A stretch of DNA of 64,000 nucleotides, from positions 186,001-250,000 of the IMG/VR virus record IMGVR_UViG_3300027793_000052; one strand, written 5' to 3'. Positions 45,763-56,434 of the stretch are shown one piece after another (the first letter of the stretch is position 1; each line of letters begins with the position of its first letter). The notes beneath the pieces are model-generated. The model was not told the DNA's origin and ran no database searches. It was given only the letters and a program-made list of their open reading frames with translations. The position numbers and the translations under genes are program-made.

Positions 45763-46251
45763 ATGGCAGATTTATTAATGAGAATGCCGGTTCCATACGA
45801 ACCAAAAAAACAAAATAGATTTATATTAAGATTCCCATCACCACTAGGTATTCAGGAATGGTTTGTTAAAGCAGCTTCAAGACCTAAATACACGTCACAA
45901 GAAACTGAAATTCAGTTCTTAAACACATCTACTTTTGTAACAGGTAGATTTACTTGGGAAACTATAAGTGTAACATTCCGTGACCCTATTGGTCCATCGG
46001 CGGCACAAGCTTTAATGGAATGGGTTCGTCTTCATTCTGAATCCGTAACTGGTAGACAAGGATACGCTGCTGGATACAAGAAAGATGTTGAATTAGAATT
46101 ACTAGATCCAACAGGTGTTGTTATAGAAAAATGGATTTTACAAGGTACAATGTTAAATGATGTAGATTTCGGTTCTTTGGCCTATGATGCTAATGATATA
46201 GCTGAAATTACAGCAACTTTACGTTTCGATAGAGCTATACACGTATTCTAA
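45763..46251 (+). CDS. Tail tube protein (T4 gp19-like)
   Basis: EPKKQNRF, RP......EI.FLN, GR..WE.ISVTFRD, W.R...E...G..GY...YKKD.EL.LLDPTG...EKW.L.G, F.FD.A. Confidence 0.93.
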   Translation: MADLLMRMPVPYEPKKQNRFILRFPSPLGIQEWFVKAASRPKYTSQETEIQFLNTSTFVTGRFTWETISVTFRDPIGPSAAQALMEWVRLHSESVTGRQGYAAGYKKDVELELLDPTGVVIEKWILQGTMLNDVDFGSLAYDANDIAEITATLRFDRAIHVF

Positions 46252-46268
46252 AAATTATTTGTCATATA

Positions 46269-46300
46269 CTTGACAACCAAAATGAAAGTTCATATATTTG
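46269..46300 (+). promoter_or_regulatory. Bacteroidota-type promoter (CTTG-N20-TATATTTG)
   Basis: Exact -7 box 5 nt upstream of ATG 46306. Confidence 0.6.
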
Positions 46301-46305
46301 TATAT

Positions 46306-47889
46306 ATGGACTTTTCTTTTTTTATAACAGACAATAAATCTGGTCATAAGACCAAAGAGTCGTGGTTTTCTAAAAACCACCCAAAGGAATATCAAGCGGT
46401 GATTGATTATTGTGGTAGTAAATTACCAACAGATTCTTCTTTCAAAGAGAAGGTTTGGGTTTATTTCAACGCACTAGATGGTAGACCTTGTTGTGAATCC
46501 TGTGGTTCAACGGTTAAATTTTCGGAAAGGTTCGATAGAGGTTACAATCAGTTTTGTTCGTTGGATTGTGCTAACAAGAGTGGTTTATTAATAGATAAAA
46601 TTAAAAAGTCCAACCTAGAAAACCACGGTGTTGAATTTTACACCCAACACAAAGATTTTGTTGGTAAGCAGAAAAAAACTAAATCAGTTAGATACGGTAA
46701 TGAAAACTATAATAACGTAGGAAAAATGTTATCCACCAAGTTGGATAAATATGGTAATACAAATTATAACAATTTTGACTTATATAAGAAGACGTGTTTA
46801 AATAAATACGGTGAAGATAATTTCTGTAAAACAAAACAATATAGGGATTTATTAAAGAATAAAATTAAGGAAAGATACCCTAATTTAAATATTAAAAATA
46901 TTTCAGAAGATTTATCGGAATTGGAGATTTTGTGTGACGATTGTCACACCGAATATAAGATATCCCAAAGTTTACTTAGAGAACGTGTTAAACACAAATA
47001 TGTTAATTGTACTAACTGTAATCCTGTTGGTATGTCCTTTTCTTCCTCTTATGAAGATGAGTTATCTAAGATATTAAATGAGTGGGGTGTGGCACATTTA
47101 AGACACACCAAAATACCTGGTACTAAGTTAGAATTAGATATTTTAATACCACAAATTAACCTCGCCATCGAATTCAATGGGTTATTTTGGCATAACGAAC
47201 TTTTTGTTAACACTGAGTATCATTTAAATAAGACGGAATTGTGTGATAAAAACGGAATGGATTTAATACATATATTTGAGGACGAGTGGTTGTATAAAAA
47301 AGATGTGGTACTATCTATAATAAAAAACAAATTAGGGTTGATTACCCAAAGGGTATATGCCAGAAATTGTAGGATTAAATTAGTAACAAGTGGTCAACAT
47401 AAAGATTTTTTAGAGGATAATCACATACAAGGTTCTGTCAACACAACAATCAAATTGGGTTTATTCTATGGTGACGAATTAGTTTCATTAATGACCTTTG
47501 GTAGACGAAATGGTATTGGTAAAACTATAGATTGGGAACTTATTAGATTTTGTAATAAAAAAGATACGATCGTTGTTGGTTCAGCATCTAAGTTATTTAA
47601 ATATTTTATAAAAAACTATGAACCTAAAAATGTTATCTCTTACTCTGATAGAAGGTGGTTTTCGGGTGAATTATATCAATTGTTAGGGTTTAAACCAACA
47701 ACACCATCTCAACCAAATTATTGGTACGTTAATAATACGATTAGATACCATAGATTAAATTTCAAGAAAAACGTTTTGGTTAAACAAGGGTTTGATAAAA
47801 ACAAATCTGAACGTGAAATAATGTTTGAACGTGGATATTACCGTATATATGATTGTGGTAATATAAGATGGGAATATTTTTCTGAATAG
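46306..47889 (+). mobile_element. Putative free-standing endonuclease (Zn-finger + PD-(D/E)xK-like + GNAT/Mom-like), copy 2
   Basis: CESCG/FCSLDC; KYG repeats; ELDILIPQINLAIEFNGLFWH; YARNC...HIQG...WELIRFC...RIYDCG. Start set at MDFSFF (46306), after the promoter. Confidence 0.75.
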
Positions 47890-50285: not shown

Positions 50286-50315
50286 AAAAAAAGGGACCGT
50301 TAAGTCCCCATTTTT
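50286..50315. terminator. Probable bidirectional terminator
   Basis: A7-GGGAC-N6-GTCCC-CA-T5 between convergent genes. Confidence 0.6.
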
Positions 50316-51306
50316 ACCAATCAAAATCGTATTTGGATTTATCATCATAATTACCACCGTTATAATAAGGATTTTTATTACTTCTATCTGATCCTAGAAA
50401 CTCTCCATTATTGAATAATAAATCAAAATCATCGTCATCATCTAAGTCATTAAAAAAATCACTTTTTTTTTCTTCATTTAATAAACCTCTATTGTTTGAG
50501 TTACTAAAAGAATAGGTTTTTTCTTGTTTACGATTTTCATATTTTTCTTCACCCAATTCAGATATTAATTTAAGACCTAATTCAAAACCGTTTTGGACAT
50601 CGTCGATAATAACATATTCATGGTCAGTATGATAACGATAATAGCCGGCCGCTAAGTTAAGACAAGCTATATCAAATTTCCCAACAATTTGCCAAGCGTC
50701 AGTGTAAGGGTGGTATGCCCAATCATCAATTCCAGCTTCTGTAATTAAACCCGTAACCTTGTTAGCGAATTCACTTTCTTGATTAAATAAGTAACGTCCC
50801 ATAAGTGTTAAACTCATGGAATTACCTTCAGGTGAGTCGTATTGAATACCATAACCAACATTCTTAAAGAATTCAGGGTCAGCGTACTTACTACCTTGAC
50901 ACCCTATTTCTTCAGATACAAAGAAAGCTGCCTTAACGTTTTCTAATGTGTCTAACATCTCTAAACATAGAAACACCCCACACTTGTCATCACCACCGAT
51001 ACCTGACGGTTGTTTGGTCTTACCATCAATACCTCTAAGTATTTGTTTACCGTCCTTAACTTCTTCAACCACTTTTAGGTTTAAGTTAACTCTGTGCACA
51101 GTATCAGTATGTGAAATAAAACATGGGTACCATTCAGCTTTACCTTTGGTTGCGTAAATATTACCGTGTGTGTCTGTATAATGTTCTATACCTTTTTCTG
51201 TTAGAACTTTCTGAAGATACTCAATCATTAACTTCTCATTTCTAGAATGAGTAGGTACTGATAGTACTTCTTTTAAACGATTGAGTTTTTCTTGTGTCAT
51301 TTTCAT
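50314..51306 (-). CDS. Zinc aminopeptidase, M28/M42/M20-like
   Basis: SHTDTV, GGDDKCG, SEEIG, QYD and YHTDHE metal-ligand motifs. Confidence 0.88.
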   Translation of the reverse strand: MKMTQEKLNRLKEVLSVPTHSRNEKLMIEYLQKVLTEKGIEHYTDTHGNIYATKGKAEWYPCFISHTDTVHRVNLNLKVVEEVKDGKQILRGIDGKTKQPSGIGGDDKCGVFLCLEMLDTLENVKAAFFVSEEIGCQGSKYADPEFFKNVGYGIQYDSPEGNSMSLTLMGRYLFNQESEFANKVTGLITEAGIDDWAYHPYTDAWQIVGKFDIACLNLAAGYYRYHTDHEYVIIDDVQNGFELGLKLISELGEEKYENRKQEKTYSFSNSNNRGLLNEEKKSDFFNDLDDDDDFDLLFNNGEFLGSDRSNKNPYYNGGNYDDKSKYDFDW

Positions 51307-51358: not shown

Positions 51359-51468
51359 ACTAATTTTAATAAAAATGTGAATTAAATCTATTTATTAATA
51401 AACCTTTACATATTAAAACAAGGTTTTATTATTAGTCTGAATAACAAATTTAAAAAAAAGTTTTAAAC

Positions 51469-52245
51469 ATGTCAAATGTAAAACAACAAACACAAGAGAT
51501 TCAATTTCAAACACCATTCGATGTTATACCTTTGCCATCAAAAGGTTTATTATATCCAGGTCAAAATGGAAATGTAAAAGTTGAATATATGACAGCTATG
51601 GATGAAAACATCTTAACATCACCTAATTTAATTAAGAGTGGTAAAGTTATTGATGTTTTAATGGAAAGGAAAATAAAAGAAGCACCAGTACCTTTTGAAC
51701 AATTATTGGTGGGTGATAGAAATGCTATTATGATTTGGTTACGAGCTACAGGGTATGGTGAAATTTATCCTGTTAAATTAACTGATCCTAATAGTGGTGT
51801 TGAATTTGAGTATGAGGTCGATTTAAGTCAATTAAAGTCTAAGCCCTTACTTGATGGTATAGAACCTGATGAAAACGGTGAATTTTCTTTTGAATTACCT
51901 AGAAGTAAGAAAATGATTAAGTTTAAACTTTTAACAGTGGGTGATGAAAAAAGCATTGCTTCAAAAACTGAAAAATATGAAAAAGCCACTAAGTCACAAA
52001 TATCAAATACATTAACTTATAGATTACAAACACAAATTAAAGAAGTTGATGGTAATAGAGATATAAACTTTATACAACAATTTATAAATGTAATGCCAGC
52101 TTACGATTCACTTAAGTTTAGAGAATATTCAGATAAAATTGAACCAGGAATAGACATGTCGGTTGAGGTGGAGGGGCCGACTGGTACATTTCAAGCTCCA
52201 ATTACCATCGGACTCAACTTTTTTTGGCCTAACGTCAGAATATAG
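51469..52245 (+). CDS. Baseplate hub assembly/tail assembly chaperone, T4 gp26-like
   Basis: IPLPSKG..Y, V.YMTA.DENILTS, GDRNAI.I.LR...YG, F.LP.SK..I.FK.LT..DE; ends NFFW. Confidence 0.8.
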   Translation: MSNVKQQTQEIQFQTPFDVIPLPSKGLLYPGQNGNVKVEYMTAMDENILTSPNLIKSGKVIDVLMERKIKEAPVPFEQLLVGDRNAIMIWLRATGYGEIYPVKLTDPNSGVEFEYEVDLSQLKSKPLLDGIEPDENGEFSFELPRSKKMIKFKLLTVGDEKSIASKTEKYEKATKSQISNTLTYRLQTQIKEVDGNRDINFIQQFINVMPAYDSLKFREYSDKIEPGIDMSVEVEGPTGTFQAPITIGLNFFWPNVRI

Positions 52246-52273
52246 TTTAAGTTTACGTAGGGAAATATATTAT

Positions 52274-52417
52274 ATGGTAAAACATATGAGATTTTCTTAC
52301 GAATCTGTTCAAAATATGCCAGTATGGGAAAGAAGGATTTTTCTGGATTTATGGCAAAAAGAACTAGAGGAACAAAAACAGGAATATGAAAAAATTAAAA
52401 ACAAATCTAAAAGATAA
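52274..52417 (+). CDS. gp51-like small chaperone segment (probably also made as a frameshift fusion with the upstream ORF)
   Basis: MRFSYESVQNMPVWERRIFL matches the gp51-like M-P-x-W-E-R motif; the frame is open well upstream of this ATG. Confidence 0.7.
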   Translation: MVKHMRFSYESVQNMPVWERRIFLDLWQKELEEQKQEYEKIKNKSKR

Positions 52418-52442
52418 AATGGGGCTAATAGTCCCATTTTTT
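52416..52442 (+). terminator. Intrinsic terminator
   Basis: AAAATGGGGCT-AAT-AGTCCCATTTTTT. Confidence 0.75.
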
Positions 52443-52472
52443 ATTTATGTGATATTTATAATATAAACTATA

Positions 52473-53813
52473 ATGATAATAAAGGTTAAAGATATTATTA
52501 AAGAAGTTGATGTTACTGGCGGAAAATACAATCCATTGAACCCTTACGCTTCTGAACCTTCTGATCCTACAAGAGTTATAAAAAATTTAGGTGGTGACGA
52601 TGCTGGTTCAGCTGAAGCACGTTCAGAATATCTTAGAGATAAAATAGAACAAAACTTTAGTAAGTTAGGTATACCCGCTTATGACCTAAGGTCTTATATG
52701 AAAATACAGGGTATATATACTGAAGAATTATTAAAAAGTTATACCCAACCATTTGATTTTTCTTTTATGAAAGAAAATGGTGAAAAATTTTCTGGTAAAG
52801 CCACTTATAATAAAGAATTATCTAAACAAAATAATACTATAGTTTTAAATTTTAATAATGGTAGTATAATATTTTCTCAGGATTCTATTAAAAGACCTTT
52901 CTTAGCTAAAAAAGGTTTTTGGGCTAAATATAAAGAAAAGTTATCATTAAGGGGTCTACAAACTAATTCTATTTTTGACGTAAAAATAATCGGTAATATC
53001 TCTAATACCAACCAAGAAGGCGGTGATAAAAAAGGTTCAGAAAATTATAAAGTAGGTGATAAGGTTAATTTTAAGACAAATGATGGTAAATTAGGTTCTG
53101 GTACGATTTCAAAAATAGATGGTGATAACTATGTTATCGGTGACGGTAAAGGTGGTGAAATTACTATCAAAAAAAGTAATATAACATCTAAAATAGACAT
53201 TTCAACTAAAAAAGAGGATAATAAACAAATAGGTCTATATAATGATTTAGCAGGATTTTTTAAGTTCATTTTTAATAGTAATAAAAAGTTACAAAATAAA
53301 ATAAATACAGTAGAGTCTATAATAGATGATATATCTAAAAGTCTTTTAATTACAGAACAAGATGAACAATCTACTCCGATAGAAAAAATTAAAATTTTAA
53401 AAATAGGTATATTAGGTGATTTATACCCAAAAGAAGATGATTCTGACACATCAGGAGGTTCAGTAGATAAGATTCCTACTGATGAATATGTAAAATGTAA
53501 GGCAGAATTAAAATTTAAAGAAGAAGATGATGGTTTCTTTAATAAACAACTAAAGAAACAAATACAAGATGGTTTAAAGAACGGTAATTTTTTTGTTAGA
53601 ATGTCACAAAAACCAAAAGGTATTGTGTTAATATTCAGTAAAACAGAAAATCAGTCCGGTGATTTCTTCACATTAGCAGGTCAAAATATAAAATCACCAA
53701 AAGACCCTAAACAGTGGAAAGGTAATGTTAAAGTCGGTAAGAAGGCTTTGGGTGATAAAGATTTTGAGGGATCAGACGCTCAAATAAATAATTTGGTTTT
53801 AATGAATAAATAA
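52473..53813 (+). CDS. Hypothetical protein with KDIIKE N-terminus, sharing modules with 43186
   Basis: GLYNDL-x-GFFK motif and a KVGDKV SH3/KOW-like module. Confidence 0.75.
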   Translation: MIIKVKDIIKEVDVTGGKYNPLNPYASEPSDPTRVIKNLGGDDAGSAEARSEYLRDKIEQNFSKLGIPAYDLRSYMKIQGIYTEELLKSYTQPFDFSFMKENGEKFSGKATYNKELSKQNNTIVLNFNNGSIIFSQDSIKRPFLAKKGFWAKYKEKLSLRGLQTNSIFDVKIIGNISNTNQEGGDKKGSENYKVGDKVNFKTNDGKLGSGTISKIDGDNYVIGDGKGGEITIKKSNITSKIDISTKKEDNKQIGLYNDLAGFFKFIFNSNKKLQNKINTVESIIDDISKSLLITEQDEQSTPIEKIKILKIGILGDLYPKEDDSDTSGGSVDKIPTDEYVKCKAELKFKEEDDGFFNKQLKKQIQDGLKNGNFFVRMSQKPKGIVLIFSKTENQSGDFFTLAGQNIKSPKDPKQWKGNVKVGKKALGDKDFEGSDAQINNLVLMNK

Positions 53814-56434
53814 TGGCTGAAGATAGTAATTACAAAAGAACTAAAGCTGAAGCTGAACTCAGGGAGAAGATAGCCGAAAGTATACAAGACGCCACAAAAA
53901 ATTTAGACAGTTTTGCTGACGCCCAAAAAACTATAGTTAAGAACTATAAGTTAATGAAAGAGTTATCAGAAGAGACTGCTAATAACGAACGTAAAATATC
54001 CGAACTTAACGAAAAAATTAAAAACGCTAGTGAGGAACAGAAGAAAATATTATTAAAAGAAGTTCAGGCTCTTGAGAAGATAAACGAAGAAAATAGACAA
54101 CAATACGCTTTATATCAAGGTATCAATAAAGAGTTATCCAAGAAAAGAAATTTATTAAAGTCTGTTGGTGGTTCAATAATGGATGGTGCCAAGGCTTTAA
54201 AAAACTATTTCATACCATCTTTAGGTGAGGTATTTAATAAATTCTTAGAAATAGACAACTTAGCCCATCAAACAGCGAACACAATAGGTTTTCAAGGTGA
54301 TAGATTTAAATTCATGCAAGATAATTTAACTGTCACTAGAGATACTTTTGTTGAGATGGGTTACAGTATTGAGTCAGCTTACAAGGCTCAATCAGCATTA
54401 TCTGACGCTACAGGTAGACAAGTTATGTTGAGTAAACAAGCTTCTGTGGCTATGGCGGAAACAGCTAGAATTACAGGTATGGAGGTTGAGGAATTAACCG
54501 CTATGGCTGGTCAAATGGATGCATTTGGTTTAGGGGCTAAACAGTCAGCTGATATTGTCTTACAAATTTCTAGAGAGTCTGCGGCAATGGGTCTTAATTC
54601 TGGTAAGGTTATTAAAAAATTTGAACAAAACTTAAACCTATTAAATAAGTTAAACTTCAAGAACGGTGTTCAAGGTCTTAAAGAAATGACCAAGTTTTCT
54701 GAGAAATATAAAATAGATATGCAAGCCGTAGCTGGTGTAGCTGATAAAGTGTTTAGACCTGAAGGTGCTATTGAAGCTGCAGCACAGTTACAAGTTTTAG
54801 GTGGTGACTTGGCGGCATTAGGTGACCCTTTTACTTTAATGTATAAAGCCCGTAACTCTCCTGAAGAATTGGCTAAGAGTTTAACAAAGGCAGCAACAGC
54901 TTCAGCAACTTTTAACGCTAAAACTGGTGAGTTTGAAGTTAACGCTCATGAATTGGATAGACTTAGAGAAGCTGCTCAAGCTTTAGGTATGGATTACTCA
55001 CATTTAGTTGAGGTTGCAAAACAAGGTGCTAAAGTTGGTAAGTTTGAAGGTTTATTGGGTGGTAAAGGTTTAGATAAGGAAACAATGGATGCTTTGGTTG
55101 GTGCAGCACAAATGGGTAAGGATGGGGCGTTTTTAACTATTAACGGTAATGAGGTTTTACTTAAAGATATCACAAAAGAACAAGCTGCTATGTTTAAGGA
55201 GGATCAATCTAAAAGGGATGAATTAGCTAAAAAAGCTATGTCAATACAGAACAATTTTGATGCTATTAAAAATGAACTAATGGTTGCTTTAGTAAAAGTA
55301 TTCGAAGGTGTAGATTGGAAATCTGTTATGGAGACTTTAAAATCGGTGGCTGGTTGGATTAAGAACGCTATAGATTGGTTACGAGAAACATTTAGTCCAA
55401 CTGGGTTATTATTAAGTGGTCTGGCCATATATTTCGGTGGTAAAGCTGTATGGGCTTTTATACAAGGTAGGATATTCGGTTCCTCAGCTGCAGCAGCATT
55501 TAATACTGGTACCATGGGTGGTGGTGGAAAAGGTGGGATTATGAGTAAAATATTCGGTGGGAAAACTAAAGAAGGTGGACCCGGATGGACTCCTACAGGT
55601 GTACCCGGACAATTCAGGGAAGATGCTACAGGTGAAATAGCACAAAATAACCCTTCCAATATGACCAAAGGTATGGATATGGGTAATATGGTAAAAGGTG
55701 CGGCAGCTGTATTAATATTATCTGGTGCTTTATTTGTATTCGGTAAGGCTTTACAGGAATTAGATAAAGTGACAAATAAAGGTGAAACTATAGCTATGGC
55801 CGCAGCAGGTTTAATAACATTAGGTTTAACGGCACGAATATTATCTAACGGTTCTGTACAAATGATTTTAGGTGCCGCAGCTGTAGTTGTACTGAGTGGT
55901 GCATTATATGTTTTAGGGTCGGCTATGCAACAATTTAATGGTATAGATTGGGGTACTATGGCTAAAGCTGGTGTAGCTATTGTAGGTTTCTCTGCCGCTA
56001 TGTTCGGTTTAGGGGCTTTATTATTTGCCGGTGGTGGTTTAGGGGCTTTATTATTCGGGGCAGGTGTAGCTGGTTTTCTAGCTTTAGGTGTTGCTCTTAA
56101 TGTATTCGGTGAAGGTTTAACAAAAGTAACAGATCCTATAGAAAGGGTTAGTAAAATAGACTCTAGTGGGTTGGGTAAAACTATAGATGCTATAAACAGA
56201 GTTGATACCGATAAATTGGAAGCTCTAAAGGAATTGTCACTATTTATGTCGTTACTAGGGGCTACAACAACAATAAAATTCGACGAGACATTAAAAGTTA
56301 GTGGAAGTATAGAAGTTAAAGGTGAGGCCGGTGGTAGGTCTAGTATGGATTTAGTCAACAACGATAGTTTTGTTAGAGCACTGAGTACAAAATTAGCTAA
56401 AACTAAAGTTGAAAGTAGAAATCAAAAATCTTAA
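53813..56434 (+). CDS. Tape measure protein
   Basis: Long helical Ala/Gly/Lys-rich protein; N-terminal coiled coil; EGAIEAAAQLQVLGG motif; C-terminal hydrophobic repeats; sits between chaperones and baseplate genes. Confidence 0.85.
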   Translation: MAEDSNYKRTKAEAELREKIAESIQDATKNLDSFADAQKTIVKNYKLMKELSEETANNERKISELNEKIKNASEEQKKILLKEVQALEKINEENRQQYALYQGINKELSKKRNLLKSVGGSIMDGAKALKNYFIPSLGEVFNKFLEIDNLAHQTANTIGFQGDRFKFMQDNLTVTRDTFVEMGYSIESAYKAQSALSDATGRQVMLSKQASVAMAETARITGMEVEELTAMAGQMDAFGLGAKQSADIVLQISRESAAMGLNSGKVIKKFEQNLNLLNKLNFKNGVQGLKEMTKFSEKYKIDMQAVAGVADKVFRPEGAIEAAAQLQVLGGDLAALGDPFTLMYKARNSPEELAKSLTKAATASATFNAKTGEFEVNAHELDRLREAAQALGMDYSHLVEVAKQGAKVGKFEGLLGGKGLDKETMDALVGAAQMGKDGAFLTINGNEVLLKDITKEQAAMFKEDQSKRDELAKKAMSIQNNFDAIKNELMVALVKVFEGVDWKSVMETLKSVAGWIKNAIDWLRETFSPTGLLLSGLAIYFGGKAVWAFIQGRIFGSSAAAAFNTGTMGGGGKGGIMSKIFGGKTKEGGPGWTPTGVPGQFREDATGEIAQNNPSNMTKGMDMGNMVKGAAAVLILSGALFVFGKALQELDKVTNKGETIAMAAAGLITLGLTARILSNGSVQMILGAAAVVVLSGALYVLGSAMQQFNGIDWGTMAKAGVAIVGFSAAMFGLGALLFAGGGLGALLFGAGVAGFLALGVALNVFGEGLTKVTDPIERVSKIDSSGLGKTIDAINRVDTDKLEALKELSLFMSLLGATTTIKFDETLKVSGSIEVKGEAGGRSSMDLVNNDSFVRALSTKLAKTKVESRNQKS

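What the first reader, a model, noticed from the sequence alone, without database searches (positions are those of the whole stretch)
52163..52417. Probable programmed +1 frameshift fusing the gp26-like and gp51-like tail chaperones
Seen: the gp26-like ORF ends AAC TTT TTT TGG CCT ... TAG, with a T7 run at 52219-52225. The gp51-like ORF is in the +1 frame and is open from before this run. Both Phe tRNAs can re-pair perfectly after a +1 slip (TTT TTT to TTT TTT, next codon GGC), skipping a Trp codon. The residues between the slip and the first ATG (SEYSLSLRREIYY) look like coding sequence. Established: tail chaperones upstream of tape measure genes are usually made as G/G-T pairs by -1 frameshifting (-2 in Mu). 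Inference: a +1 variant in a T4-like myophage.
Basis: partly seen in the sequence, partly recalled or inferred. Interest (0 to 1): 0.7.

Follow-up and report, generated by a model that had tools for sequence, protein, structure and literature searches.

The report
Conserved +1 frameshift in tail chaperone
A giant freshwater phage most likely makes a short and a long version of a tail-assembly protein from one gene by letting the ribosome slip one base forward, which would explain why phage T4 carries two related genes (26 and 51) for the same job.

Summary
The gp26-like ORF (51469-52245) ends AAC TTT TTT TGG CCT...TAG, and a +1-frame ORF is open across the T7 run through to 52417.

- In 115 of 119 relatives (down to about 25% identity; hosts from Flavobacterium and Microcystis to Bacillus, Listeria and Rhodothermus) the downstream domain sits in the +1 frame.
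- Homology starts exactly at a conserved Phe-Phe site (UUU_U, CUU_U or UUU_C).
- Half of the loci have no start codon upstream of the site.
- The P-site Phe codon is never TTC (0 of 110).
- Frame 0 stops 3-6 codons later.

Natural single-ORF relatives carry the predicted junction (NFF-GL) with non-slippery TTC TTC. Another lineage, like T4, carries a short and a long paralogue.

T4 gp26 and gp51 both match PF12322 over its full length, and gp51 is that domain plus the extension.

Gene order in relatives (sheath, tube, this gene, tape measure) and a TAC-like N-terminal fold fit a G/GT-type chaperone pair.

T4-like cyanophages place the same extension in the -1 frame behind an invariant U_UUU_UUC.

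No report of this recoding was found. No protein evidence exists, and efficiency is unknown.

The parts
51469..52245 (+). Frame-0 ORF, the short product (258 aa): a gp26-like protein, equivalent to T4 gp26 or lambda gpG
   Evidence: ORF list. PF12322 at 1.6e-9, above the cut-off, and phrog_150 at 2.4e-11. AF2 model pLDDT 89. N-terminal residues about 4-105 resemble tail assembly chaperone structures 3fgx, 3klu and 2ob9.
52219..52228 (+). Shift site TTT TTT TGG C. tRNA-Phe on UUU (52222-52224) re-pairs with UUU (52223-52225), and the next codon read is GGC (52226-52228).
   Evidence: Sequence. In 115 +1-type loci the P-site codon plus next base is UUU_U in 105, CUU_U in 4 and UUU_C in 4. It is never UUC, although 24% of the other Phe codons in the same genes are UUC.
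52210..52234 (+). 25-nt block (GGACTCAACTTTTTTTGGCCTAACG) invariant among 12 distinct close relatives
   Evidence: 82% of frame-0 third positions vary across the gene, but none varies in this block.
52226..52417 (+). +1-frame extension (63 aa plus TAA), a gp51-type C-terminal domain. The fused long product is 51469-52224 joined to 52226-52414, 315 aa.
   Evidence: phrog_634 at 1.5e-6. The fused piece P0003 matches phrog_150 positions 181-281 of 282 across the junction, and the unfused piece does not. It aligns without a gap at the junction to the single-ORF protein P0232 (E 1e-13). Codon-position variability fits +1 coding downstream of the site only.
52154..52218 (+). Stretch where the +1 frame is open by chance upstream of the shift site; not coding in +1
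   Evidence: variability follows frame 0 (third positions 15/22, first 8/21, second 6/22). In relatives the +1 frame often opens only 0-3 codons before the site.
52416..52450 (+). Terminator-like hairpin and T tract directly after the extension's stop codon
   Evidence: Contigs from RNA libraries end just before it, at 52392 and 52384.
45763..46251 (+). Tail tube protein gene (context)
   Evidence: phrog_4542 at 4.8e-25.
53813..56434 (+). Tape-measure-like protein gene (context), two genes downstream
   Evidence: phrog_4372 at 4.8e-7. Gly/Ala-rich hydrophobic segments are visible in the translation.

Best explanation
One gene gives two proteins. Most ribosomes read frame 0 and stop at 52243-52245, making a 258-aa gp26-like protein. 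A fraction of ribosomes, with tRNA-Phe in the P site on UUU (52222-52224), slip one base forward onto UUU (52223-52225). They then read GGC and continue in the +1 frame to 52417. This gives a 315-aa protein with the same first 252 residues plus a 63-residue helical extension homologous to the C-terminus of T4 gp51.

By position and fold, the pair is the T4-superfamily counterpart of the lambda G/GT tail assembly chaperones that act with the tape measure protein.

Shown here: the anatomy; deep conservation of the site, the offset and the junction; in-frame and two-gene equivalents in other lineages.

Inferred: that the slip is ribosomal, its efficiency (probably a few percent, as at UUU-Y sites in E. 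coli), and the chaperone function.
For: 1. Anatomy.

2. Frame offset. 93 of 94 distinct IMG/VR and isolate loci, and 22 of 25 loci from MAG contigs, carry the homologous domain in the +1 frame as a 55-95-codon extension. Frame 0 stops 3-6 codons after the second Phe.

3. No independent start. 46 of 94 loci have no ATG, GTG or TTG in the +1 frame upstream of the site, and 80 of 94 have no ATG. The first ATG lies a median of 28 codons into the conserved domain. The extension alignment starts at the site without length variation.

4. Codon choice. The P-site codon is TTT in 110 loci and CTT in 4, never TTC, against 24% TTC elsewhere in the same genes. Two of the four loci without a +1 extension put it in the -1 frame behind a canonical heptamer: A_AAT_TTC in L084, where the Phe codons are TTC TTC, and T_TTT_TTT in L219.

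5. Natural in-frame equivalents. P0232 (331 aa, PF12322 plus extension) has the junction ...SNFFGLPDNY... encoded by AAT TTC TTC GGA CTC. P0152, P0153, P0163 and P0173 are further single-ORF fusions. The window's fused piece aligns to P0232 across the junction at E 1e-13.

6. Two-gene equivalents. L228 has tandem short (272 aa...SFFWPSLGEIN*) and long (308 aa) paralogues next to a TMP-like gene. T4 gp26 and gp51 both match PF12322 over its full length, with gp51 about 45 residues longer. The window's genome has only one PF12322 gene.

7. Selection pattern. The +1 frame is not coding upstream of the site but is coding downstream, and a 25-nt block around the site is invariant.

8. RNA. A 977-nt contig from an RNA library covers 51416-52392 with no difference or gap, so the dominant RNA form keeps T7.

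9. Chaperone reading. Relatives have the order sheath, tube, this gene, tape measure. 3fgx, 2ob9 (HK97 tail assembly chaperone) and 3klu (YqbN) are among the four best of 48,161 chains for both models; they are the top three for the window model (Z 4.8-7.7).

10. CUU_U and UUU are known +1-prone motifs (PMC10885494; Schwartz and Curran 1997 on UUU-Y sites, from my own knowledge).
Against: - There is no protein-level evidence for the fused product in any member.
- No stimulatory element was found. Downstream structure is not enriched (mean z -0.81, against -0.62 and -0.42 in control regions). There is no conserved Shine-Dalgarno-like motif and no Rfam hit.
- The 0-frame A-site codon UGG is not rare in this genome (10.7 per 1000, against 3.4 for GGC).
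- Close relatives of the window all keep an ATG at the position of 52286, so a separate 43-aa peptide (or 47 aa from 52274) could also be made here.
- The direct profile link from the extension to the T4 gp51 C-terminus is weak and rests on phrog_634 and phrog_150.
- Counts of loci are not phylogenetically independent.
- The structural Z-scores (5-8) are in a range the tool calls unreliable on their own.
Confidence: 0.85

Rival explanations
1. No recoding. The gp51-like ORF is translated on its own from ATG 52274 or 52286 (47 or 43 aa), perhaps coupled to termination of the upstream ORF. The open +1 frame and the T7 run are incidental.
For: ATGs exist at 52274 and 52286, and the second is kept in all close relatives. 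Annotators of relatives called small separate ORFs. T7 runs occur in frame elsewhere in the window.
Against: Across the family there is no conserved start. 46 of 94 loci lack any canonical start upstream of the site, and the first ATG is a median of 28 codons inside the conserved domain. Homology begins exactly at the Phe-Phe site. TTC is never used at the P-site codon. Natural single-ORF fusions have the predicted junction.
Confidence: 0.04
2. The long form arises by transcriptional slippage. RNA polymerase drops one U in the U7 run, and a normal ribosome reads the edited mRNA.
For: 105 of 115 loci have a run of at least four T at the site, and most have T7. Homopolymer slippage is known in bacteria and phages (own knowledge).
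Against: About a dozen lineages keep the +1 arrangement with interrupted runs: TTT CTT TGG, TTC TTT TGG, TTC TTT CGT, TTT CTA TTC. Polymerase slippage is not expected at such runs, but P-site re-pairing still works. Contigs from RNA libraries show only T7. Being contigs, they exclude only a dominant edited form, not a minor one.
Confidence: 0.07
3. The shift is -2 rather than +1, as in phage Mu, giving a product one Phe longer (...NFFFGL...).
For: On T7, a -2 slip of the P-site tRNA-Phe also re-pairs perfectly. For TTT CTT T, tRNA-Leu(GAG) could pair with UUC at -2 (reasoning from the sequence).
Against: A -2 slip cannot re-pair at TTC TTT CGT. The natural in-frame homologue P0232 has NFF-GL, and the +1 product aligns to it without a gap. 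No downstream structure of the kind that usually drives -2 shifts was found.
Confidence: 0.03
4. Artefact or decay: a homopolymer sequencing error, or a recent frameshift mutation, split one gene.
For: Homopolymers are error-prone, and single-ORF relatives exist.
Against: The same arrangement is found in more than 100 independent assemblies and isolates, including sites without a homopolymer. 120 protein clusters at 68-100% identity all end at the same place. Several DNA and RNA runs hold the identical sequence.
Confidence: 0.01

Closest known systems
Lambda gpG/gpGT and the conserved tail-assembly-chaperone frameshift of long-tailed phages (Xu, Hendrix and Duda 2004; P2 E/E+E'; Mu -2)
   Same: Two products share an N-terminus. 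The shift lies a few codons before the stop of the short form. The gene sits between the tube and tape-measure genes. The N-terminal fold is TAC-like.
   Different: The direction is +1, by a single P-site slip on UUU_Y or CUU_U, rather than a -1 tandem slip on X_XXY_YYZ. The short form is about 250 aa and belongs to PF12322, with extra domains, rather than being a gpG of about 100-140 aa. No sequence similarity to G or T.
T4 gp26 (hub assembly chaperone or hub subunit) and gp51 (hub assembly catalyst)
   Same: Both are PF12322 proteins. gp26 ends ...EFFELL*, like the short forms here. gp51 is the same domain plus a C-terminal extension linked to the window's extension through phrog_634 and phrog_150. 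Both are assembly factors for the hub that contains the tape measure gp29 (PMC3004832).
   Different: T4 uses two divergently transcribed paralogous genes and no recoding. Pairwise identity to the window protein is undetectable by BLAST.
gp26 and gp51 of T4-like cyanophages and pelagiphages (Kyanoviridae: S-PM2, HTVC008M)
   Same: A single PF12322 gene is followed by an overlapping ORF that encodes the same extension (...MPWER...).
   Different: The extension is in the -1 frame behind an invariant T_TTT_TTC heptamer in 62 of 62 distinct loci. It is annotated as a separate small gene. 34 of 62 have an ATG four codons after the site.
prfB (RF2) +1 frameshift and UUU-Y shift-prone sites of E. coli
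   Same: A P-site tRNA slips one base forward on CUU_U or UUU_Y and re-pairs (PMC10885494; Schwartz and Curran 1997, own knowledge).
   Different: The A site holds a sense codon (UGG, UAY, CGU), not a stop codon. No Shine-Dalgarno-like stimulator three bases upstream. No autoregulatory logic.
Listeria phage PSA +1 frameshifts in capsid and tail genes (Zimmer et al. 2003)
   Same: A +1 programmed frameshift gives C-terminally extended structural-module proteins in a phage.
   Different: Different proteins (major capsid and tail), different sites, and a narrow distribution. Known to me from the literature only, not tested here.

Membership tests
G/GT-type tail assembly chaperone pair made by programmed frameshift | Overlapping ORF pair located between the tail tube gene and the tape measure gene | tested here: met
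   Relatives have sheath, tube, gp26-like gene, small overlapping ORF, TMP. In the window the tube gene (45763-46251) is separated from the pair by a homing endonuclease and small ORFs, and one 446-aa gene lies before the TMP-like gene.
G/GT-type tail assembly chaperone pair made by programmed frameshift | Conserved slippery sequence shortly before the stop of the upstream ORF, with the downstream ORF lacking its own conserved start | tested here: met
   UUU_U, CUU_U or UUU_C in 113 of 115 loci. The stop follows 3-6 codons later. 46 of 94 loci have no canonical start upstream.
G/GT-type tail assembly chaperone pair made by programmed frameshift | -1 direction on an X_XXY_YYZ heptamer | tested here: not met
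   The window and 115 of 119 relatives need +1. A -1 shift on a canonical heptamer is seen in L084, L219 and the Kyanoviridae.
G/GT-type tail assembly chaperone pair made by programmed frameshift | Tail assembly chaperone fold | tested here: inconclusive
   3fgx, 3klu (YqbN) and 2ob9 (HK97 TAC) are the top three hits for the window model and rank 1, 2 and 4 for the P0232 model. Z is 4.8-7.7 and the alignments cover most of the target chains. Z is below the tool's reliability range, and Foldseek found nothing significant.
G/GT-type tail assembly chaperone pair made by programmed frameshift | Both the short and the fused protein are made, and both are needed for tail assembly with the tape measure | not testable with these tools
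   Indirect only: lineages with separate short and long genes (T4; L228), and T4 genetics (PMC3004832).
Pfam PF12322 T4_baseplate (gp26/gp51 family) | Match above the gathering score | tested here: met
   38.2 bits against a cut-off of 24.5. BFVD structural matches to 'baseplate hub' proteins down to E 1.7e-23.
gp51 'baseplate hub assembly catalyst' (phrog_634) | Profile match of the extension, colinear with T4 gp51 | tested here: met
   Extension residues 13-62 match profile positions 71-120 (E 1.5e-6). T4 gp51 residues 147-246 match positions 2-103 (E 1.2e-23). The fused piece spans phrog_150 positions 181-281. Direct profile comparisons are weak.
prfB-type +1 programmed frameshift | P-site slip on CUU_U or UUU_N with re-pairing | tested here: met
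prfB-type +1 programmed frameshift | Stop codon (or rare codon) in the A site, and a Shine-Dalgarno-like stimulator just upstream | tested here: not met
   The A site holds UGG, UAY or CGU. UGG is not rare. No conserved purine-rich motif is seen in the upstream codons, which vary.
Transcriptional slippage (polymerase stuttering) | Uninterrupted homopolymer conserved at the site | tested here: not met
   Interrupted runs are kept in about a dozen +1 lineages. Contigs from RNA libraries show T7.

The most novel reading that the evidence does not exclude
The gp26/gp51 pair is the long-missing G/GT-type tape-measure chaperone pair of the whole T4 superfamily, and making a short and an extended form is ancestral and obligatory. 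Evolution has met this need in four interchangeable ways: a +1 slip (this window's broad clade), a -1 tandem slip (T4-like cyanophages and pelagiphages, and sporadic members of the +1 clade), a single in-frame long gene, or duplicated short and long genes (T4 itself). This would mean that well-studied cyanophage genomes carry an unannotated programmed frameshift. [quoted passage not shown]
Probability: 0.6. Interest if true: 0.8.

Novelty: new variant of a known kind. Interest (0 to 1): 0.75.

Why it matters
Programmed frameshifting in tail chaperone genes is one of the most conserved recoding events in phages. T4-type phages have stood outside it, and gp26 and gp51 have remained poorly understood assembly factors.

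If correct, this finding does four things:
- It adds a large, deeply conserved +1 class that uses a bare UUU_Y or CUU_U site with no obvious stimulator. This is a useful natural test bed for +1 slippage.
- It explains T4's two paralogous genes as a replacement for recoding.
- It predicts a mis-annotated fused protein in hundreds of environmental and isolate myophage genomes, with a parallel -1 case in cyanophages.
- It gives direct, cheap experiments: a junction peptide, and synonymous slip-site mutants.

In practice, gene callers and annotation pipelines should join these ORFs.

Tried and rejected
Searches that found nothing useful:
- blastn of the 6.5-kb region against phage records found nothing.
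- tblastn with the 63-aa extension found nothing.
- The 13-sequence alignment A1 was too diverse for a locus scan.

Weak or negative homology tests:
- An HMM of 93 extensions did not detect T4 gp51.
- hhalign gave only E 0.07 over 24 columns. The link to T4 therefore rests on phrog_634 and phrog_150.
- BLASTP of T4 gp51 against the window proteins was negative.
- A profile of the gp26-like family found no solved structure by sequence.
- Foldseek against the PDB gave nothing significant.

Searches for a stimulatory element:
- Downstream RNA structure is not enriched over control regions.
- Rfam gave only a sub-threshold sraA match over the terminator.
- A codon-usage argument for a 'hungry' UGG codon is not supported.

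Other:
- The word-indexed protein search listed only short forms among its best 120 hits. In-frame fusions appeared only in the exhaustive profile search.
- A four-letter-word translation with TGGC=G shifted frame a second time, so AACT=N on a sub-range was used instead.
- DUF6760 (PF20546) matches 9 of 54 extensions below its threshold. This was not pursued.
- Complex prediction was not used. Which partner the extension binds (tube, hub or tape measure) is a guess, and a negative result would say nothing.
- Seven literature searches found no description of gp26/gp51 recoding. The library covers open-access papers only, so prior publication cannot be excluded.

Full report
**What is in the window**

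The + strand carries a 258-aa ORF at 51469-52245 that matches Pfam PF12322 (T4_baseplate, the gp26/gp51 family) above its cut-off, and phrog_150 'baseplate hub'. Its last codons are AAC TTT TTT TGG CCT AAC GTC AGA ATA TAG.

The +1 frame is open from 52154 to the TAA at 52415-52417. Its product matches phrog_634, 'baseplate hub assembly catalyst' (gp51), through its last 50 residues. The first ATGs in that frame are at 52274 and 52286.

A terminator-like hairpin follows directly at 52416-52440. A tail tube gene lies upstream at 45763-46251. It is separated from this gene by a homing endonuclease, several small ORFs and a peptidase gene on the opposite strand. A tape-measure-like gene (53813-56434) lies two genes downstream.

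The window belongs to a 318-kb virus record that holds only this one PF12322 gene. The sequence occurs in freshwater metagenomes and metatranscriptomes.

**Is it more than chance?**

The T7 run by itself is not. In-frame TTTTTTT occurs four times in the long ORFs of this 32% G+C window. The comparative evidence is what decides.

I collected four sets of relatives:
- isolates found by tblastn;
- 23 close IMG/VR loci;
- the best 80 of 590 IMG/VR relatives found with a profile;
- 26 MAG contigs.

Of 94 distinct loci in the first three sets, 93 carry a 55-95-codon ORF in the +1 frame that overlaps the end of the gp26-like gene. Of the 25 analysed MAG contigs, 22 do. The relatives go down to about 25% identity and include phages of Flavobacterium, Microcystis, Bacillus, Listeria, Streptococcus and Rhodothermus.

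The frame-0 protein always ends with a Phe-Phe (rarely Phe-Leu) motif followed by 3-6 variable codons and a stop. The conserved +1-frame protein begins immediately after that motif, with no length variation.

**The site**

In 115 +1-type loci the second codon of the motif plus the next base is:

| Codon plus next base | Loci |
|---|---|
| UUU_U | 105 |
| CUU_U | 4 |
| UUU_C | 4 |
| other | 2 |

In the two other loci, a slip one codon earlier works. The codon is never UUC, although 24% of the other Phe codons in the same genes are UUC. This holds in loci of 45-51% G+C, where the first Phe codon is TTC but the second stays TTT.

The following 0-frame codon is UGG in most loci, but UAC/UAU, CGU, CAC or AGU in others. 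It is simply the shadow of the first residues of the extension (Gly-Leu, Thr-Leu, Val-Pro).

The common denominator is therefore a single P-site tRNA that can re-pair one base downstream. This is what is known for CUU_U in prfB and for UUU-pyrimidine sites in E. coli (PMC10885494; Schwartz and Curran 1997, from my own knowledge). A -2 slip cannot re-pair at TTC TTT CGT. Polymerase stuttering is not expected at TTT CTT T or TTC TTT C. Both are therefore poor general explanations.

**No independent start**

- In 46 of 94 loci there is no ATG, GTG or TTG in the +1 frame between the preceding stop and the site. In 80 of 94 there is no ATG.
- In many loci the +1 frame opens only 0-3 codons before the Phe-Phe.
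- The first ATG lies a median of 28 codons into the conserved domain.

Among 12 distinct close relatives of the window, nucleotide variability upstream of the site follows frame 0 only. Downstream it follows the +1 frame. A 25-nt block (52210-52234) is invariant, while 82% of frame-0 third positions vary across the gene.

**Natural controls**

An exhaustive profile search with the extension found 2145 proteins. Most are short ORF calls. Several are 308-331-aa proteins with the extension at their C-terminus and PF12322 at their N-terminus.

P0232 has the junction ...SNFFGLPDNY..., encoded by AAT TTC TTC GGA CTC. This is the junction predicted for a +1 slip, but with non-slippery Phe codons. The window's fused C-terminal piece aligns to it across the junction without a gap (E 1e-13).

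Contig L228 has a short paralogue (272 aa, ending ...SFFWPSLGEIN*) directly followed by a long one (308 aa, with the extension in frame) and a tape-measure-like gene.

Two of the four loci without a +1 extension carry it in the -1 frame behind canonical heptamers:
- L084: A_AAT_TTC, with TTC TTC at the Phe-Phe;
- L219: T_TTT_TTT.

So wherever the +1 site is absent, another route to the long form is present.

**Link to T4**

T4 gp26 (208 aa) and gp51 (249 aa) both match PF12322 over its full length (8.8e-64 and 3.9e-52), and gp51 is about 45 residues longer. gp26 ends ...KEFFELL*, the same Phe-Phe plus short tail.

| Profile | T4 protein or window piece | Residues | Profile positions |
|---|---|---|---|
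| phrog_634 | T4 gp51 | 147-246 | 2-103 |
| phrog_634 | window extension | 13-62 | 71-120 |
| phrog_150 | T4 gp51 | 3-248 | 13-280 |
| phrog_150 | T4 gp26 | 5-208 | 14-235 |
| phrog_150 | window fused piece | 5-100 | 181-281 |
| phrog_150 | window unfused piece | none | no match |

Direct profile comparisons of the extension with gp51 are weak.

The picture is that T4 encodes the short and the long form as two paralogous genes. The 1380 Straboviridae records found all have a full-length gp51, and one of them annotates it 'tape measure protein assembly chaperone'. [quoted passage not shown]

**Chaperone reading**

In relatives the gene sits between the tube and tape-measure genes, the classical place of G/GT.

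AlphaFold models of the window protein (pLDDT 89) and of the natural fusion P0232 (pLDDT 93) were compared with 48,161 solved chains. Three entries head both lists: they are the top three hits for the window model and rank 1, 2 and 4 for the P0232 model, covering the N-terminal 100 or so residues:
- 3fgx;
- 2ob9, the HK97 tail assembly chaperone;
- 3klu, YqbN, which I know as an XkdN-like chaperone.

Z is 4.8-7.7. That is modest, but it is reproduced in two proteins of about 30% identity and covers most of each target chain. The extension is predicted as three helices. The function remains an inference.

**RNA evidence**

Logan contigs from two RNA libraries cover 51416-52392 and 51489-52384 with no indel. 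So the unit probably forms one transcript, and its dominant form keeps U7. Contigs cannot exclude a minor edited species or DNA carry-over.

**What is missing**

There is no protein evidence. No stimulator was found: no excess downstream structure, no conserved upstream motif and no Rfam hit. Efficiency is unknown. UUU-Y sites shift at roughly the percent level in E. coli (own knowledge), which would suit a G:GT-like ratio.

In the window's subclade a separately initiated 43- or 47-aa peptide cannot be excluded as an additional product.

**A wider pattern seen in passing**

T4-like cyanophages and pelagiphages (S-PM2, HTVC008M and 62 distinct IMG/VR loci) have a single PF12322 gene ending ...SFF plus one codon. 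The gp51 ORF is in the -1 frame behind an invariant T_TTT_TTC. No start is available upstream, and the annotated ATG is absent in 28 of 62. This looks like a canonical -1 version of the same recoding, and it is unannotated in the reference genomes.

**Novelty**

Seven full-text searches found no description of recoding between gp26 and gp51. None of the isolate records inspected joins the ORFs.

Frameshifting in tail chaperone genes is well known, and +1 events exist in phages (PSA). I therefore rate this a new variant of a known kind. It is unusually well supported by comparison, and it bears on the roles of T4 gp26 and gp51.

Noticed in passing
L117/L119 (S-PM2, record 150471-151363), L118/L120 (HTVC008M), L121-L200: In T4-like cyanophages and pelagiphages the gp51 ORF overlaps gp26 in the -1 frame behind an invariant T_TTT_TTC heptamer (62 of 62 distinct loci). 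One sense codon and a stop follow. There is no start upstream, and the annotated ATG four codons later is replaced by CTC, CTA, CTG or TTG in 28 of 62. This is probably an unannotated -1 frameshift.
   Followed up: partly
L084:2200-2420 and L219:800-1128: Two members of the +1 clade carry the extension in the -1 frame behind canonical heptamers: A_AAT_TTC (with TTC TTC TGG) and T_TTT_TTT (a T8 run). Either the direction of recoding has switched, or, for L219, there is a homopolymer assembly error.
   Followed up: partly
L228:603-2356: Tandem short (272 aa) and long (308 aa, extension in frame) PF12322 paralogues lie next to a tape-measure-like gene. This is a two-gene solution like T4's, but co-oriented and adjacent.
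   Followed up: partly
window 46270-47889: A 539-aa homing/HNH endonuclease gene (phrog_3339, E 3.5e-116), followed by several small ORFs and a reverse-strand M42/M20-like peptidase gene (50314-51306), separates the tail tube gene from the chaperone gene. In relatives these two genes are adjacent.
   Followed up: no
window 51469-52245 (protein residues about 105-115 and 235-245): The window's gp26-like protein, like those of phage immuto and Mel-JY01, lacks the two CxxC pairs (a zinc-ribbon-like motif) that most relatives and T4 gp26/gp51 have.
   Followed up: no
window 52226-52414: The extension and 9 of 54 homologues give sub-threshold matches to Pfam DUF6760 (PF20546; best E 1.6e-4). That family may consist of the same domain called as a separate small ORF in other contractile-tail systems.
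   Followed up: no
window 51416-52392: A contig from a metatranscriptome library begins about 50 nt upstream of the start codon and ends about 25 nt before the terminator-like hairpin. This suggests that the two ORFs form a small transcription unit of their own.
   Followed up: partly
window 52473-53813: A 446-aa ORF between the chaperone gene and the tape-measure-like gene has no Pfam or PHROG match. Most relatives have no gene, or only a small one, at this position.
   Followed up: no
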